Source of the DNA: Hyphochytrium catenoides
Taxonomy: Eukaryota > Protista > Hyphochytriomycota
Direction: 5' to 3'
Length of the DNA stretch: 64,000 bases
Assembly (NCBI GenBank): GCA_900088475.1
Contig: FLMG01001143.1
Span: 1-64,000, forward strand
The notes below the pieces were generated by a model that saw only the letters and a program-made list of their open reading frames with translations, did not search any database and was not told the DNA's origin. This document shows, piece after piece, positions 56,667 through 64,000 of the stretch. The position numbers and the translations under genes are program-made. Every line of letters begins with the position of its first letter. Position 1 is the first letter of the stretch.

Positions 56667-57451
56667 ATGTCTTTTCAAAGATCAGTCCGCGCTACTTGGA
56701 GCCCGTTTCGACGACTCTTGAGCGGGACTATTAAGGTAGATGGTTCGTCATCCCTTTAAAACCCAGTAGGTGCATCGATATGCTAATCCATTCACTTGAC
56801 CGCATTAGGATAAGCGCCTTATTCCAGCAGTTTCCCATCGAATCCAGAGCTGCGGCGGACGTGGCCATACACTGAGAAGTCCATTATGGTCATCTTCTTC
56901 CAGGCCATTTTCGGTCATAGCTCGTAAGTTCGCTCCATGGTCGATCATGACAATGTAGTCCTCATAAATCAATCATGTTGCACACTCATCTACAGATGGC
57001 GGCTCCGATGACTCTGAGCAACTGCCAGGCGATGATATGACGGGAATGCCCCCTGGGGCAACAAAGGGAGGACCCAAAATGATCATGATGTACACATGCA
57101 AAGGTGGGAGTACTCTAGTGGGCTTTATTGCTGTGCATGCCTAAAGCCACATTTCTCTTCATACCTTGCCCTTCAGTGTGTGAGACAAGAGCTGCTAAGA
57201 CCATCAGTAAGATAGCCTATGAGGAGGGAGTAGTCCTCATCCGATGCCCTGGGTGCGAGAATCTGCATCTGATAGCGGACAGATTAGGGTGGTTCGAGGA
57301 TGAATCCTGGGATGTTCAGAAGCTTCTTGCGGAGCGAGGGGAGCATTGCCAAGTTGTCACTGAAGACAACATCCTGGAGTTAACAGTCAAGGATATTGCA
57401 GGGCATGATATGCCACTTCCAGGTTCACCTGACCCCCAAAAAAGCGTTTGA
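56667..57451 (+). CDS. DNLZ: Mitochondrial DNL-type zinc-finger Hsp70 escort protein (Hep1/Zim17/DNLZ family)
   Basis: Arg/Ser-rich presequence MSFQRSVRATWSPFRRLL; MMYTCK/VCETRAAKTISKIAYEEGVVLIRCPGCENLHLIADRLGWF. Confidence 0.9.
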
Positions 57452-58704
57452 ACCCACGCGCTAGCTGGTAGACTACGCGAGCGATGGCCAACGATTCGCC
57501 ATGGACGAGTCAAGGAACTACCATGGAGCTATGGGGCTTGGGTTGACGATGAGAGTCTATTCTGGAAAGGATATCTTAGCAGGGAGGAAGTAAGGAAAAA
57601 CCTTTTGCCGGTTGGAGTTGCAGTCGGCGGGGAGATGTCAGGGAGAGGTATACGAAAGCACAAGAGGTTCAGAAGTCGAATTCTCCTTTAATATTTATTA
57701 TCACGAGGCGGTCCATTGCTGACCCTTCAATTCGAAATGTAAATGATTGGGTCGTTTCTGGCTTTGGTGCCAGCGGCAAGCGGCAGCGACGGCATAGTGA
57801 AGACTGAGAGAATAGGAAAGAAGCCTACTACTACTATGAGAGACCGCGCTCTTAGTTCAACCTTGAAGCTAACGACTCTTTCTCTATCTGCTGTACAATC
57901 TGTGAATGACCTGGCTAGCTCCATCCGTCCACGGAAGGATGAGGTTCAAACAATGCCTGTTTAGACCTCGAAACGTTCATGTCGTAGACTTGACTTTTCT
58001 GATAAATGACTTGACCTTTCGTGTTGAAGAAACGAATACCTACCGCGACCGTAGGTTCTGGAGCCCATCCCGCACAGTCAAACGAGTCCATCTTTTGGAG
58101 GGTGACTTTTAGTGCTCGACGACTATCACTGTTCCGGCCTACAGAGAACAGAGAAATCTTCACTAATAATAACAATGCCCTATTATAATTGAAGAAGGAT
58201 GCAAGTGAGAGCGGTGAGTGTGACGGACGCTGGGTGGCAATGCTGATGATGTGTACAAGTACGCAAAGAAGAGTTGTTTTGTAGTAGTAAATTAGCTTGT
58301 ATTCGTGAAGTGAGAAAGAACAGACAAACATACACACACGCAAAACTCTTGTTGTTTGTAAAGGAGACTGATAAGAAAGCGGCCAAGTGTGGCAGATGAT
58401 GAGGAGATACATGTTCCATTCATAGAGACACGAGATCTGGCTTATCTATGATTGAGGCTGATGTGGGAGGAACTGATCCGCAGGTGTGCCGTGCCTTCCA
58501 AGAGTGCTCATTGCTCCAGAGATACTAACAGCTTATTAGCAGCCTGACGCACTGAGAAAACGACCAGCTGACTGCTTTGAGCTCTCAATGAGAACATTCG
58601 ACTGTGCGTGACATCCTTCTGATATACGCTCAAGCGCCAACAACTGCGTTCCGAAGCGGGCATCTTAGGCGCATCGATTACGGTCGGCAGTCGCGTAACC
58701 TGTG

Positions 58705-60000
58705 ATGGGCTCAGATTCTGTCCCTCCTGCCCTTTCAATACCGGCTGAAGGCGAACAGTCCTCTCCATCCTGCTCTGCAGTGACAGACTTCAAGGCAGCC
58801 CTACCTCCCATCAACGTTTATCATGAGCCGATACAGTCGCTAGAAGAGTACCTCAATCACTTGGAGCTGGATAACCTTCTAGCGGATGAGACTAGGAATT
58901 TGGTAAATGAGAAGGCGCAGCAGCTAAAGACTATATCCAACCTGAGTGCCCTGCTGGCTGGCTTTACAACGATGAATGTGGTGCAAATCAACCTTACTGG
59001 CTCGGAGCCTGAGTGGGTGATGATCTGCTTTGGCGTAACAGCCTCAATTGGAGTAAGATTTCAGCCAATGGCTCCTCATCCCAGACACTTTTCACATCTT
59101 TTGATATCTGAGTTCTGCTACTAGAGTCATCATCCTCACGGACATTGCTCCAACCATGTCGCCGTCCTTCTCTTCACAAGCGGCCTCCGCCATTGTCACG
59201 TAGACAGCCCTTGTTCAACTCTGTAAGCTTAGTTCTCTTCGCATGGTGTCCCTCTCCTGCTTTAAGTATCAATGTCCTTCTCAAACTAATTCTCTGTCCT
59301 TTCTGAACTATGCAGACCGGGCTTTTGCTGCTAGCAATGGTCAGCTGCTCCCTGATCCTTGTTGGGGTCTACCGCTATGATTGCAAGAAGAGAGAGGTAC
59401 CCTTTGAAGAGTTTTGGAAAAAGAGGTTCGTGCTTCTTTGAACTACTGCCCTTCTTGAAGCGATACGACTAACTGAGGTAACGTCTTCTGCGGGACAGGT
59501 GTGAAGGCGACTTTCGGACAGCCTTTGTCTACTTCTCTTGGGGTGAGTACTTTGAGCATACTGCGGTGTGTGGAGTTCGTCTTCTGTGACCGGTTACACC
59601 ACTACTCTTCGTCTACAATGGTCCCACCGTTATAGACTCTAGTTTGCCTATTCCTATTCATCGCACTGTTCCCACTGTCTGTCCGCAGGCCGTTCTCTTC
59701 TCGCATGACTAATCCTCCTATTTCATCACTGCAGGGGTACCATGCTTTCTCCTCAACTTCATATTCTGTGGCGTTATTGTTTACAGAGCCTCCCTGCCAA
59801 CCATCATCACCACCTCTGCCATCTCAGTTCTCTCTTTGGTAATCTGGTGGTTCAGGGTAGAGAGTAAATGGAGCGGCTTCCTCACATCCTCAAACTCCAA
59901 CTTACGGCATCATGTGCCTGCTCAGCCCTCTGGGGAAGACTATTTGCACGGGGAAACTCCCAAAAGGAGGAAGTTCAGTGAGCAGGAAAAGAACCCTTGA
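58705..60000 (+). CDS. Orai-family (CRAC) calcium channel subunit, paralogue A
   Basis: TM1 QQLKTISNLSALLAGFTTMNVVQINL; TM2 ICFGVTASIG/TGLLLLAMVSCSLIL; FEEFWKKR/CEGDFRTAFVYFSW/GVPCFLLNF; TM4 TTSAISVLSLVIWWF; stop TGA 59998-60000. Confidence 0.82.
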
Positions 60001-60093
60001 TATTGACGTTATGAAGCCTCAAGTAAGGTTTAGCCGGTCATCGGCCCTCTGTTGTGGTATCCCACGTCCTGTTAAGGACGAAGCAATGCGCTA

Positions 60094-62574
60094 TTACTTA
60101 GAGCCAACGACACTGCTAAGTATATCCCGGATACCCTTAACTTTGCCAGCAAGAGAGGAGTCGAAAACCGTACAAACAAGGCCCTTCAGGAATTGGAAAC
60201 CCTTAGAAGAAACTGGGTACTGCAGAGGGCCTGGAATTGATGTGCGAATGAATGGGAAGATATCTTGCACCACGCTCTTCTGCAAGCACACATCACGTAG
60301 CCCTTCGTGTCCAGCAAAGCGTCCGAAGCCTGAATTCTTCACTCCCCCAAACGGTAAGGACTGAACCATGTAGTACGTGGCGAAGTCGTTGAGGGCTGTC
60401 ATTCCACATCTTAGTCCGTTGCCCAGCCTTTCCTGTCTCCTTCTGTTCTCTGAGAAGACAGAAGAGCCAAGTCCATAGTTGCTGTCATTGGCAAGGCGGA
60501 GGAGCTCTTCATCGTTCTTAACCTTGATAATTGACATAACTGGTCCAAACACCTCCTCCTTGGCTATCCTCATATCAGGCGTTACCTGCGATGTTATTGT
60601 GAGGGAGGTTGTCAGATATCTATCTAGTATTTAGCTTACCTAGCGGGGACTTGTGTCTGAAGAAATGGATAACAAAGAGCGTAACCTTTCGTTGGAAGGG
60701 AGGTGAAGGTGATGGAGAGAGGATTTCGCCTTATCAAAGGCATGAAAGAGACCTAGCAGGACAAGAGGAAGCGTGGAGAAGACAGAAAGCAGCTGATACT
60801 CACATCAGCCAATACCGTAGGTAGATAAAACAACCCTTTCAAAGCCTCGTTCCTCTTTCCGCCAGCCAGCAGCTTGGCACCGCGCTGTACAGCATCATCC
60901 ACCAGCTCCTGAATGATCTGCAGCTGGGCCGGCATCACCATAGCTCCCATATCAACAGTCTCTTTCCCAAGGGGATCGCCTTGGCGTAGCTTTTTGACCA
61001 CCTCGGTTACTTCCGAAAGAAACTCTTCATAAATCTTCTCGTATACGAAGACACTGCAATGTTATCATCGCCCAGAAGTGAGACAGATATGGCTTTAAAG
61101 ATTCCCAAGAGTAGATCACTCTACCCAAGACAGGCATATAAGCAAGGTAAGGCTCTCTAGTGACTCACTGCCCCCTCTGTCTCTCTCTCTTAAGGCAAGC
61201 TTGACTCCACTGTTCTAGACGACACCTACCGTTCAATACCCACACAATTCTGGCCACAGTTTTGATATACGCCGCGCAGAATCACTGGTACAACCGTAGA
61301 AAGGTGGGCATCCTCGCAGATTACAGCTGGATCTTTGCCTCCCAACTCCAACGTGACAGGCGTGAGTGACTGGGCCGCCCTGCCCATTACCAGCTTTCCT
61401 ACCTAACAGACAAGTCGAAGGGGTCAGTGCGGGAAGCCAGATAACATTGTAGCAACGAGGGCCTCTAGTAAGGAAGACAGCTATCCTATCCAACCCCATA
61501 GAGCTGGGTGGTTTCAAGCCCCCTTCCACCTACACTTTTTTCAAACCGCCCATATCTGCCTCCGTGCTTCTACAGTGAGTGTGCTGGCATCGGGACCCAT
61601 CTCTAAGCATATCTGGTCCGTCAGCTATGATATCTTACCTGAGGAGATCCAGTAAAAATTACTTTGTCCACAGAGTCGATTAGGGCTTCGCCAGCCTCCG
61701 CAAAGCCAGTCACTGTGAGCACCAGGTCTGGGTTATGTCCAGTCGCCCGAAGTGCTTCAGCCACGAAGCGCCCATAGTACTGAGAACTCCAGGCCGTGTG
61801 TTCCGATACTTTGGCAACGATGGCATTGCCTGCGAACAAACAGGAGAGAACGTGCGTGATCCAGTTCTGGAATGGATAGTTCCAGGGTGCAATTGTGCCG
61901 ATAACGCCCATGGGATGATACTCGACCCATGCACTTTTATAGATAGAGAGCAAGCCTGTGGGGCGATATTCTTGCTGGAGCGCTGCTTCTCCATGCCTAA
62001 GCAGGTATTCAACCTTTGCAAAGACAACCAGAACTTCACCAAACATAGCGTCAACCTTCGTCTTTCCTGAGTCTCTGCACGCAACCCGAACAATGTCATC
62101 TTGATGCTCTGCGATATATTTGGCAATGGTTGCTATAACACGGCGTCTCTCGGCGAAAGTAGTTTGACTCCATTCCCGTTGAGCAACCCGCGCTCGGCTC
62201 ACCAATTCTTTGACTTCATCTCTTGTCATCGCCTTGACCTCGCCGATGCGCCTCAAGGTGCTTGGATTGTAACACTGAATCATGTCCGGCCTTGTTTCCA
62301 GCTTGAGCGGCATATCTGGGTTTGCATCTTCTTCAGCGGCGTCATCACGGCTCTCGAGCTCCTGCAGGGGGACCGAGACCGAAGGTACCCGCTGCTCTGG
62401 AGATAGAAAGAGCAGGCGCTTGAGCAACAAGATTGCCACAAGGGCCACCACACCTCCCGCGATCCATTGGCTGTGCTCAAAGACGAGCACGGATAGCTCG
62501 GCAAAGGCGTTTTCGAGTAAGGTGCGGGAAGATTCTGACAGGATGCACGCAGACAAGCAAATGAAAACCATCAT
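60094..62574 (-). CDS. Aldehyde dehydrogenase, ALDH22/MSC7-like family, with N-terminal transmembrane segment
   Basis: [52 protein letters not shown] (catalytic Cys), [23 protein letters not shown]. The start codon is uncertain. Confidence 0.92.
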
Positions 62575-63316
62575 TGCGTGGTTAAGCAACCAACTGGTTG
62601 GTGATTGAAACAGGCAAATGAGCCCAGACGACTGAGTCACGGCAAGCTTCAGATAATCGTCTCGTCCGGTGAGGCGATGGCGCCACTATCCTTGAAGCCT
62701 TTATTCTTGAGTGCGTCCTAGGCCGCTGACCTTCCTCCTCTGAGTAAAGGCCTTTACTTTCTTGTCGACAGATTCTGAGGTGTGGGGCCAGCGCAGAAGT
62801 TTGGACCAGCTTCGCGCCTTCTTTTTCGTCTTCTACCCTAATATAAGGAAGCTTGAATTATAATCGGTTAGGACCTCTAGTTTTGGTAAATAGCTCAACT
62901 CTGTCTACTGAGAGCTGATTGAGAGTACAGTAGTGCCACAAAAAGTATTCTCCGCCGCAGCACTTCGTCTTACAAGGACTGTCAAAGCGGTTATTGATTC
63001 GTAATCTCGGCTATATCCCTGCTGTAAGCTGACCATTCGGACAGTCCCTGGAAAAGAGCCTTACCGTTACCGGTACGGCATGGCCTTGTTGTTCCCACTG
63101 CGGAAAAGTGAAGGGAAGCGGGATGTTGGCCCTAGTTGGGCAGCAGGCTGGACGTGATGAGTCTTCGTCTGGAAGCTTCGCAACGCATCCTTCCAAGGGC
63201 ATCTTCCCATATCGTGTGCCTTCCTCCTCCATGCTGCAGGGTAGAAACTGAGGTTAATAGCCTTAAGGAAAAGATCCTGTTATACTAGGTCTACAGCTGG
63301 CAGGGGGCTGGGCATA

Positions 63317-64000
63317 ATGCTGGCGGGCCTCTTCAATAGTCTCGGGTTCAGCAAGGAAGCGGAGGAGCAGGAGAATCGCCGTTCCTCCATAGCGGAAGAT
63401 GGAGAGGATGCTAGACCCCGGTCGACTACCTCTTCCATCGAAGGCAGTGACTGGTCGTCTTTCGGTGCTCAGCTTCGCCGCCGTCGCGGAACGAGCATAG
63501 CGCATTCAGAGATGGCCAAGTTGGAATCGGAAAGAAGAAGAGACGAAGAAGAGACGGCCCAGCGTACCCTGGAGCTAAAGATAGAAACGCGCCTGGTTGA
63601 CGAGACTCGAAAGGAGATCAATGACCGCGCTCAGCAATTGAAGACGGTTTCGACTCTCTCTGCCCTTCTTGCAGGATTTACGACGACGAACATGGTAGAG
63701 ATTAGCTTTCCAGAAGACCTATCAACCTGGATGTACCTTCTTTTCGGCGTAACTGCTGCCGTAGGGGTAAGTGAGCACTATCAGGAGGGAAATAGAGGCT
63801 GCGACCAGGACAGCGACATTGATCAGAATGGTTTGAGACGATATCCGTGGCAGAAGAGGTTTCGGACAAACAGTTGGATCAGTACAGACGGTAGATGGAA
63901 AGTATGATGCCTCTAGGAGCAGGTGGAAGCAAAGACTTAAGGCTAATGAGCTTCTTGTCCAGATGAGCCTGCTGGTGCTAGCGATGGTCAAGAGTTCCCT
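63317..64000 (+). CDS. Orai-family (CRAC) calcium channel subunit, paralogue B, 3'-partial
   Basis: RAQQLKTVSTLSALLAGFTTTNMVEISF...LLFGVTAAVG, then intron 63767-63962, then MSLLVLAMVKSS. The intron position matches paralogue A. Confidence 0.82.

What the first reader, a model, noticed from the sequence alone, without database searches (positions are those of the whole stretch)
58900..59000. Orai paralogue A naturally carries Gln at the selectivity-filter Glu (E106Q-equivalent)
Seen: SALLAGFTTMNVVQ aligns without gaps to human ORAI1 SALLSGFAMVAMVE106, placing CAA (Gln, 58984-58986) at E106. Met is at V102, Asn at R91, and apparently Asn at E190. The rest of the 4-TM gene is intact. Established: ORAI1 E106Q is non-conducting and dominant-negative in heteromers. 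Inference: a natural inhibitory/modulatory subunit or a channel for another permeant.
Basis: partly seen in the sequence, partly recalled or inferred. Interest (0 to 1): 0.75.

Follow-up and report, generated by a model that had tools for sequence, protein, structure and literature searches.

The report
Orai channel gene with glutamine filter
One of two neighbouring calcium-channel (Orai) genes in this protist has glutamine where animal Orai channels need glutamate to select calcium, but the same swap is common in algal, moss and protist Orai genes, so it is a recurrent natural variant of untested function and not a one-off.

Summary
Gene A (58705-60000, + strand, 4 exons, 255 aa) is an intact Orai-family gene. 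Codon 94 (CAA, 58984-58986) puts Gln in the column of human ORAI1 E106 / fly E178. Asn, Met and Asn sit at the R91, V102 and E190 columns. Contigs of three DNA runs carry the same codon. Haplotype differences in the coding sequence are 4 synonymous, 1 stop-to-stop and 1 non-synonymous. No RNA run exists.

A's sister is paralogue B (63317 onward, Glu at the same column); the pair has support 100/98 in the tree.

The rarity is not supported.
- Of 150 family representatives, 42 have Gln, 96 Glu, 4 Asn and 2 Asp.
- Gln is found in moss PpOrai1, Chara, Closterium, many green algae and a rhizarian. In several named green algae only Gln copies were recovered.
- All 113 animal and ochrophyte hits have Glu.
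- The tree needs 8 Glu/Gln changes, at least 6 on well-supported branches.
- Asn at the R91 and E190 columns is normal for non-animal Orai.

Reading A as a dead, dominant-negative subunit from ORAI1 E106Q is therefore weak. More likely A is a working pore subunit with a weaker filter, alone or mixed with B.

I found no paper that comments on natural Gln at this site. This scan had already noted the same pair, on this same DNA.

The parts
58705..59052 (+). Orai A exon 1 (116 codons): variable N-terminus, TM1 and the start of TM2
   Evidence: Pfam PF07856 39.1 bits. Maps to family profile positions 26-92 at 65.3 bits.
58945..58986 (+). Pore-lining TM1 segment SALLAGFTTMNVVQ
   Evidence: Gap-free alignment to fly Orai SALLSGFAMVAMVE.
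58984..58986 (+). CAA = Gln94, in the column of human E106 / fly E178
   Evidence: Unchanged in contigs of three DNA runs.
58939..58941 (+). AAC = Asn79, in the column of human R91 / fly K163
   Evidence: This column is N/H/S/T in most non-animal Orai.
58972..58974 (+). ATG = Met90, in the column of human V102 (hydrophobic gate)
   Evidence: Among the sequences fetched, Val fills this column in 201 of 233 E-types but only 33 of 85 Q-types.
59053..59315 (+). Intron 1 (GT..AG), at the same position and phase as intron 1 of paralogue B
59316..59425 (+). Exon 2: rest of TM2 and the YDC..PF..FW loop motif
   Evidence: Family profile positions 95-131, 35.0 bits.
59426..59498 (+). Intron 2 (GT..AG)
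59499..59542 (+). Exon 3: RCEGDF..AF..F motif and the start of TM3
   Evidence: Family profile positions 134-147.
59543..59734 (+). Intron 3 (GT..AG)
59735..60000 (+). Exon 4: TM3, TM4, the KW motif, the C-terminal tail and stop TGA at 59998-60000
   Evidence: Family profile positions 149-218, 37.5 bits. Weak Pfam Orai-1 match to the end of the model.
59755..59757 (+). AAC = Asn175, in the column of human E190 / fly E262
   Evidence: Asn is the family consensus at this column.
60094..62640 (-). Aldehyde dehydrogenase gene (several exons) lying between the two Orai genes
   Evidence: Pfam PF00171 at 151.8 and 109.3 bits on two ORFs.
63317..63766 (+). Orai paralogue B exon 1 (150 codons), TM1 reads SALLAGFTTTNMVE
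   Evidence: Pfam PF07856 40.6 bits. Family profile 82.6 bits. Sister of A with support 100/98.
63698..63700 (+). GAG = Glu of paralogue B, in the E106 column
63963..64000 (+). Start of B exon 2; the gene runs off the end of the window

Best explanation
Gene A is an intact Orai-family pore subunit that is being kept by selection. It arose by a lineage-specific local duplication. Its sister is paralogue B, which starts 3.3 kb downstream beyond an aldehyde dehydrogenase gene. In A the outer-pore Glu has become Gln, which takes one first-base change (GAR to CAR). This is one of at least 6-8 independent Glu/Gln switches in non-animal Orai. Gln-type Orai are widespread and look like the only Orai recovered in several green-lineage species. 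I therefore infer that a ring of Gln still gives a working pore. It would have a neutral carboxamide filter in place of the high-affinity carboxylate Ca2+ site, so Ca2+ affinity and selectivity would be low and monovalent or mixed cations would pass. A could work alone, or mix with B to lower the number of carboxylates in the ring. Shown: gene structure, homology, residue columns, sister relation and recurrence of Gln. Inferred: conduction, permeant ion, assembly with B and expression.
For: - The gene is intact, and its four exons map in order onto the family profile (positions 26-92, 95-131, 134-147, 149-218).
- It keeps the near-invariant family residues: QLK, SALL.GF, PF..FW, RCE, A..F, P.F and KW.
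- GC3 is 0.586, against 0.58 for B and 0.553 for the ALDH gene.
- Haplotype differences in the coding sequence are 4 synonymous, 1 stop-to-stop and 1 non-synonymous (E41G, in the variable N-terminus).
- A and B are sisters with support 100/98 on 189 columns, with the trait column left out. They share the intron position and a GFTT.N motif seen in none of the 150 hits.
- Gln fills the column in 42 of 150 representatives, 47 of 71 green-lineage hits and moss PpOrai1 in a published alignment.
- Both genes of the Coccomyxa tandem pairs are Gln.
- The tree needs 8 changes of the Gln state, at least 6 forced by supported branches.
- Q-types keep the K87-column Lys/Arg, L95 and G98, and the same net acidic loop charge as E-types (1.33 against 1.37).
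Against: - No RNA data exist, so expression and splicing are unverified.
- No orthologue closer than about 48% identity was found, so conservation of Gln between species cannot be tested for this gene.
- A matches only 35 of 55 conserved family columns, near the family's 10th percentile, and has lost two Trp that are 92% conserved.
- In ORAI1 the same substitution abolishes current (PMC4835918).
- No non-animal Orai has been recorded electrically in any paper I found.
- 'Only Gln copies in a species' rests on capped searches, not on complete proteomes.
Confidence: 0.5

Rival explanations
1. A is a built-in inhibitory or modulatory subunit. It co-assembles with Glu-type B into hexamers and, like ORAI1 E106Q, reduces or abolishes Ca2+ conduction.
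For: ORAI1 E106A/Q lose function (PMC4835918). That E106Q is dominant-negative is my own knowledge of the 2006-2007 ORAI1 papers and was not checked here. A and B are recent sister paralogues 3.3 kb apart, which makes co-assembly plausible. A keeps the structural motifs needed to fold and assemble.
Against: Gln-type Orai are common, and in named green algae, Chara and moss only Gln copies were recovered. Both members of the Coccomyxa tandem pairs are Gln. An inhibitor with nothing to inhibit makes little sense there. The pore context also differs from ORAI1, with no Arg at the R91 column and no Glu at the E190 column.
Confidence: 0.25
2. A is an unexpressed or decaying duplicate, and Gln is just one of its drift changes.
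For: A is a divergent family member (35 of 55 conserved columns; W138F and W161V). In the TM1-TM2 tree its branch is about twice as long as B's (0.63 against 0.33). There is no RNA evidence.
Against: There is no stop or frameshift, and all six splice sites are canonical. All four exons score on the family profile. Coding polymorphism is mostly synonymous, 4-5 against 1. GC3 equals that of neighbouring genes. Gln at this site is a recurrent state kept across whole clades.
Confidence: 0.07
3. Gln-type Orai, A included, carry something other than cations (anions or protons), or act as non-conducting membrane scaffolds, as was suggested for the Orai-derived Jiraiya/TMEM221 proteins.
For: Removing the only carboxylate ring removes the cation-selecting site. 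Jiraiya is described as an Orai derivative that lacks the Ca2+-binding residues (PMC7016017).
Against: Q-types keep acidic residues in the outer loop at the same level as E-types, and keep only one basic ring (the K87 column). That does not look like an anion pore. Nothing here bears directly on a scaffold role.
Confidence: 0.1

Closest known systems
Animal Orai/CRAC pore subunits (human ORAI1-3; Drosophila Orai, PDB 4HKR)
   Same: Same Pfam family (PF07856). Same four-helix order. The TM1 motif SALL.GF aligns without gaps. The Lys at the K87 column, L95 and G98 are kept.
   Different: Gln replaces the filter Glu. Asn replaces R91/K163, Met replaces V102 and Asn replaces E190. The loop and TM3 motifs (YDC, PF..FW, RCE.DW, KW) belong to the non-animal branch. 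No animal-type C-terminal STIM-binding helix is evident. All 113 animal and ochrophyte hits keep Glu.
Engineered ORAI1 E106Q / E106A pore-dead mutants
   Same: Same residue change in the same column.
   Different: Those are laboratory mutants in an animal pore with R91, K87, R83 and E190. A is a natural gene in a pore that lacks three of those four, and belongs to a family where Gln is common. Loss of function is therefore not transferable.
Green-lineage Gln-type Orai (moss PpOrai1, Chara braunii, Closterium, Coccomyxa, Chlorella, Tetradesmus and others)
   Same: Natural Gln at the same column, and otherwise conserved non-animal Orai motifs.
   Different: They form separate clades. A acquired Gln independently, and its sister B has Glu. 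They carry LQF/TQF after the filter position and a C-terminal GLPFDWH motif that A lacks. None has been characterised functionally in the papers I found.
Ochrophyte (diatom, bolidophyte, pelagophyte, brown alga) Orai
   Same: Among the nearest named relatives by tree path (P0186, P0168 and P0170, the latter two from a diatom and a marine transcriptome set). They share the loop and TM3 motifs.
   Different: All have Glu. The diatom survey states that even the divergent diatom class keeps the glutamate (PMC11085791).

Membership tests
Orai family (Pfam PF07856, 'Mediator of CRAC channel activity') | Score above the curated Pfam cut-off | tested here: met
   Exon 1 scores 39.1 bits against a cut-off of 25. 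Exon 4 adds a weak match to the end of the model.
Orai family (Pfam PF07856, 'Mediator of CRAC channel activity') | Four transmembrane helices collinear with a solved Orai structure | tested here: met
   The family profile matches 4HKR at E 1.5e-34 over TM1-TM4. A's four exons map in order onto profile positions 26-218. Hydropathy shows TM2-TM4 segments.
Orai family (Pfam PF07856, 'Mediator of CRAC channel activity') | TM1 pore motif S-A-L-L-x-G-F | tested here: met
   SALLAGF at 58945-58965.
CRAC channel in the animal sense (Ca2+-selective, STIM-gated) | Glutamate ring at the outer end of TM1 (E106 / E178) | tested here: not met
   Gln94, CAA at 58984-58986.
CRAC channel in the animal sense (Ca2+-selective, STIM-gated) | Basic inner pore (R91/K163 and R83 in addition to K87) | tested here: not met
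   Asn79 at the R91 column and Ala71 at the R83 column. Only Lys75 (the K87 column) is kept.
CRAC channel in the animal sense (Ca2+-selective, STIM-gated) | TM3 glutamate E190 / E262 | tested here: not met
   Asn175, which is the consensus of the non-animal family.
CRAC channel in the animal sense (Ca2+-selective, STIM-gated) | C-terminal coiled-coil helix that binds STIM, and a STIM partner with a CAD/SOAR domain | not tested
   By eye the tail after TM4 (from ESKWSGFL) shows no heptad pattern. An earlier scan note (s1-371082) reports a STIM-like EF-SAM protein without the activating domain elsewhere in this genome. I did not check it.
CRAC channel in the animal sense (Ca2+-selective, STIM-gated) | Store-operated, highly Ca2+-selective current | not testable with these tools
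   Needs electrophysiology.

The most novel reading that the evidence does not exclude
Gln-type Orai form a widespread, functionally distinct class of channels in plants, algae and protists, with permeation unlike CRAC channels. The Glu/Gln position acts as an evolutionary toggle that has flipped many times. This tandem Glu/Gln sister pair would then be a natural system in which the cell sets Ca2+ selectivity or conductance by the ratio of the two subunits in the hexamer.
Probability: 0.3. Interest if true: 0.7.

Novelty: new variant of a known kind. Interest (0 to 1): 0.5.

Why it matters
Models of Orai permeation rest on the Glu ring as the sole selectivity filter. Non-animal Orai are usually called Ca2+ channels by homology, without any recording. 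In the searches made here about a quarter to a third of non-animal Orai hits lack that Glu; the samples are capped and shaped by the queries. They include the moss protein used as 'the plant Orai'. So the function of these proteins is an open and directly testable question. This locus offers a clean comparison: two recent sister genes in one genome that differ at the filter. The specific claim of a rare natural E106Q is weakened, because the state is common and is visible in public sequences.

Tried and rejected
- Searching single exons against solved structures gave only chance hits. A two-sequence profile was needed to reach fly Orai.
- The word-indexed protein search with B exon 1 found nothing.
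- The full-library search found no protein above 60 bits. Neither the organism's own proteins nor close orthologues are in the library, so conservation of Gln in orthologues could not be tested.
- No RNA run holds the locus. The runs laid were contigs of one study, so they confirm the codon but are not independent of the assembly.
- A tree on TM1-TM2 alone (57 columns) did not resolve A and B (support 57). A clade test on it was uninformative because the quick search had missed better trees. It was replaced by the 189-column careful tree.
- I looked for a residue that changes together with Glu/Gln (the V105, V107, +3, V102 and E190 columns). No partner was consistent across the independent switches.
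- Five literature searches found no comment on natural Gln at this site. Collins and Meyer 2011 is not held.
- Joined model: no search, fold or structure prediction was made with the joined 255-aa protein, because it has no reference. Exons were searched one by one by reference. In local scripts the joined translation was printed once to check the frame. The exon pieces, aligned separately to the family profile, were merged by profile column for the tree.

Full report
**Gene model and observation.** The region 58705-60000 on the + strand holds a four-exon gene (58705-59052, 59316-59425, 59499-59542, 59735-60000). All introns are GT..AG, and the frame is open for 255 codons to TGA at 59998-60000. 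Codon 94 is CAA at 58984-58986. Exon 1 scores 39.1 bits on Pfam Orai-1 (PF07856, cut-off 25), and exon 4 gives a weak match to the end of the same model. A second Orai gene, B, starts at 63317 on the same strand. Its exon 1 ends at 63766, its intron lies at the same position and phase as intron 1 of A, and the gene runs off the end of the window. An aldehyde dehydrogenase gene on the minus strand lies between A and B.

**Residue columns.** Single exons do not reach solved Orai structures by sequence search. A profile of exon 1 of A and B does. It aligns QLKT.S.LSALLAGFTT.N.V[Q/E] without gaps to fly Orai KLKASSKTSALLSGFAMVAMVE (4HKR, E 0.019). A 31-member profile of the homologues found later matches 4HKR at E 1.5e-34 over TM1-TM4. 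Searched one by one, A's four exons fall on consecutive parts of that profile (26-92, 95-131, 134-147, 149-218; 65.3, 35.0, 7.7 and 37.5 bits). This validates the splice model and fixes the columns:
- Gln94 = human E106 / fly E178
- Asn79 = R91 / K163
- Met90 = V102
- Asn175 (59755-59757) = E190 / E262

B has Glu (GAG 63698-63700), Thr at the R91 column and Thr at the V102 column. A published alignment places human ORAI1 SALLSGFAMVAMVE in the same columns as algal and oomycete Orai (PMC11085791 Data S2).

**Reads.** Three DNA runs (two samples, one study, kept as contigs) cover the locus, and none differs at 58984-58986. They may include the data from which the window was assembled, so this confirms the codon but is not independent support. 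A second haplotype or strain differs by about 1%. In A's coding sequence the listed differences are E41G, four synonymous changes (codons 123, 141, 217, 243) and TGA to TAA. Two further differences in the low-depth run X3 were not listed. Four or five silent changes against one replacement is modest evidence of purifying selection. GC3 of A (0.586) equals that of B (0.58) and is close to the ALDH gene's (0.553). No RNA run holds the stretch, so expression and splicing remain untested.

**Relatives.**
- The word-indexed search with B exon 1 found nothing.
- The full HMMER search of 1.84 billion representatives with the A+B exon-1 profile gave 168 hits at E of 0.001 or better. The best scored only 60 bits, so neither the organism's own proteins nor close orthologues are in the library.
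- In the 150 hits listed, the filter column reads Glu 96, Gln 42, Asn 4, Asp 2, Ser 2, Arg 1 and gap 3.
- Named Gln-type members come from the green algae Apatococcus, Coccomyxa and Asterochloris, the streptophyte alga Closterium and the rhizarian Lapot gusevi.
- A profile search aimed at the green lineage returned 71 proteins: Gln 47, Glu 20, Asn 2 and 2 unaligned. Gln-types include Chlorella, Micractinium, Tetradesmus, Monoraphidium, Chromochloris, Myrmecia, Symbiochloris, Elliptochloris, Chara braunii and Closterium.
- Coccomyxa elongata g8772/g8773 and C. viridis 007516/007517 carry consecutive gene numbers on one contig, so they look like tandem pairs. Both members of each pair have Gln.
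- Glu-type green sequences come from Tetraselmis, Picocystis, Bryopsis and Chlamydomonas.
- In the published alignment, moss PpOrai1 reads FAGFAVVTLTQFGF, which is Gln in the human E106 column.
- The 113 new hits of a search dominated by animals and ochrophytes all have Glu.
- Pooled over all 326 fetched sequences with an intact TM1 (a sample shaped by my queries), the counts are Glu 233, Gln 85, Asn 6 and Asp 2.

**Phylogeny.** A tree on TM1-TM2 alone could not resolve A and B (support 57), and a clade test on it was uninformative. I then used 95 sequences and 189 profile columns with the filter column removed. A's exon pieces were aligned separately and merged by column, and B was 39% filled. 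The careful IQ-TREE run puts A and B as sisters with ultrafast bootstrap 100 and SH-aLRT 98. The bootstrap had not fully settled when the search ended. The Gln state needs 8 changes on that tree (bootstrap range 8-8), and at least 6 are forced by well-supported branches. A and B also share a GFTT.N motif seen in none of the 150 hits. The A/B duplication is therefore lineage-specific. The named relatives nearest by tree path are Glu-type, but the branching just outside the A+B pair is poorly supported. Glu to Gln in A is the parsimonious direction, though the tree is unrooted.

**What is ordinary and what is not.** The R91 column is N/H/S/T in most non-animal Orai, and the E190 column is N/D/V with Asn as consensus. 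Those two features of A are therefore family norms. A matches 35 of 55 strongly conserved family columns, near the 10th percentile of the family (median 80%). It has lost two Trp that are 92% conserved (W138F, W161V), but it keeps QLK, SALL.GF, PF..FW, RCE, A..F, P.F and KW. Q-types as a group keep the Lys/Arg at the K87 column (80 of 85), L95 and G98. Their outer-loop net acidic charge equals that of E-types (1.33 against 1.37). Their V102 column is much less often Val (33 of 85 against 201 of 233), although clades are not independent samples. I found no residue that changes consistently together with Glu/Gln.

**Interpretation.** ORAI1 E106A/Q lose function and E106D loses Ca2+ selectivity (review PMC4835918). 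That E106Q is dominant-negative is my own knowledge and was not checked here. If that phenotype applied generally, large parts of the green lineage would carry only dead Orai genes that are nevertheless conserved. That is unlikely. I therefore favour a working pore with a neutral, weaker filter and low Ca2+ affinity and selectivity. A could form it alone or mixed with B (confidence about 0.5). A purely inhibitory subunit of B remains possible here because the E-type sister is present (about 0.25). The other readings are decay (about 0.07) and a non-cation or scaffold role (about 0.1). None of these can be decided without expression data and recordings.

**Literature.** A diatom survey states that even the divergent diatom Orai class keeps the glutamate (PMC11085791). 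A comparative study notes Orai expansions in Emiliania and describes Jiraiya/TMEM221 as an Orai derivative lacking the Ca2+-binding residues (PMC7016017). A Chlamydomonas review speaks of preserved sequence features and a missing STIM (PMC8318260). Five searches found no paper that comments on natural Gln at this position. This is not proof that none exists, and Collins and Meyer 2011 is not held.

**Limits.** No search, fold or structure prediction was made with the joined 255-aa model, because it has no reference. Exons were searched separately by reference. The statement that some species have only Gln copies rests on capped searches, not on complete proteomes. The counts are of cluster representatives and of query-shaped samples, not of species.

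**Earlier scan notes.** First-stage notes on this same DNA already describe the A/B pair. A note elsewhere in the genome reports a STIM-like EF-SAM protein without the activating domain; I did not check it.

**Verdict.** The gene is real and intact as far as sequence can show. The uniqueness is refuted, and the inhibitory reading is weakened but not excluded. The wider pattern of recurrent natural Gln in non-animal Orai is the more interesting result.

Noticed in passing
window 4550-26985 (- strand): Four long ORFs (2534, 2839, 899 and 658 aa) that look like one giant Gly/Ser-rich repeat protein. Composition is Gly 22% and Ser 18%, with units like GG.V.L.SG.S. The two ORFs scanned (2534 and 899 aa) have no Pfam match. 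It coincides with the strong GC skew (about -0.17) of window 1-28000.
   Followed up: partly
window 57128-57451 (+ strand): A small ORF with a DNL-type zinc finger (Pfam PF05180, 87.9 bits), the Hsp70-escort type of protein. It lies just upstream of Orai A.
   Followed up: partly
window 60094-62640 (- strand): An aldehyde dehydrogenase gene (PF00171) sits between the two Orai paralogues, so the duplication is local but not strictly tandem.
   Followed up: partly
alignment A4 (proteins P0026, P0058, P0139, P0081, P0061, P0127, P0131, P0035): Green-lineage Orai, both Glu-type and Gln-type, share a conserved C-terminal motif GLPFDWH..P after TM4. Chlamydomonas and moss have it too in the published alignment. 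The window's gene A lacks it. Its function is unknown.
   Followed up: no
proteins P0283/P0316 (Coccomyxa elongata g8772/g8773) and P0287/P0317 (C. viridis 007516/007517): Consecutively numbered Orai genes on one contig in two Coccomyxa species, apparently tandem pairs. Both members of each pair carry Gln at the filter column.
   Followed up: partly
proteins P0018, P0040, P0328, P0331 and P0028, P0092: Small clades of non-animal Orai with Asn (motif ..VAQTN..) or Asp at the filter column. These are further natural variants of the filter.
   Followed up: no
PMC11085791 Data S2 (published Orai alignment): Moss PpOrai1 has Gln and Chlamydomonas Cre01.g025000 has Glu in the human E106 column. The paper's text comments only on the diatom glutamate.
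   Followed up: yes
window 58500-64000: Runs X2 and X3 carry a haplotype or strain about 1% different from the window. Differences are densest in introns of the ALDH gene (60603-60842, 61016-61226), including a 5-base insertion behind 60635.
   Followed up: partly
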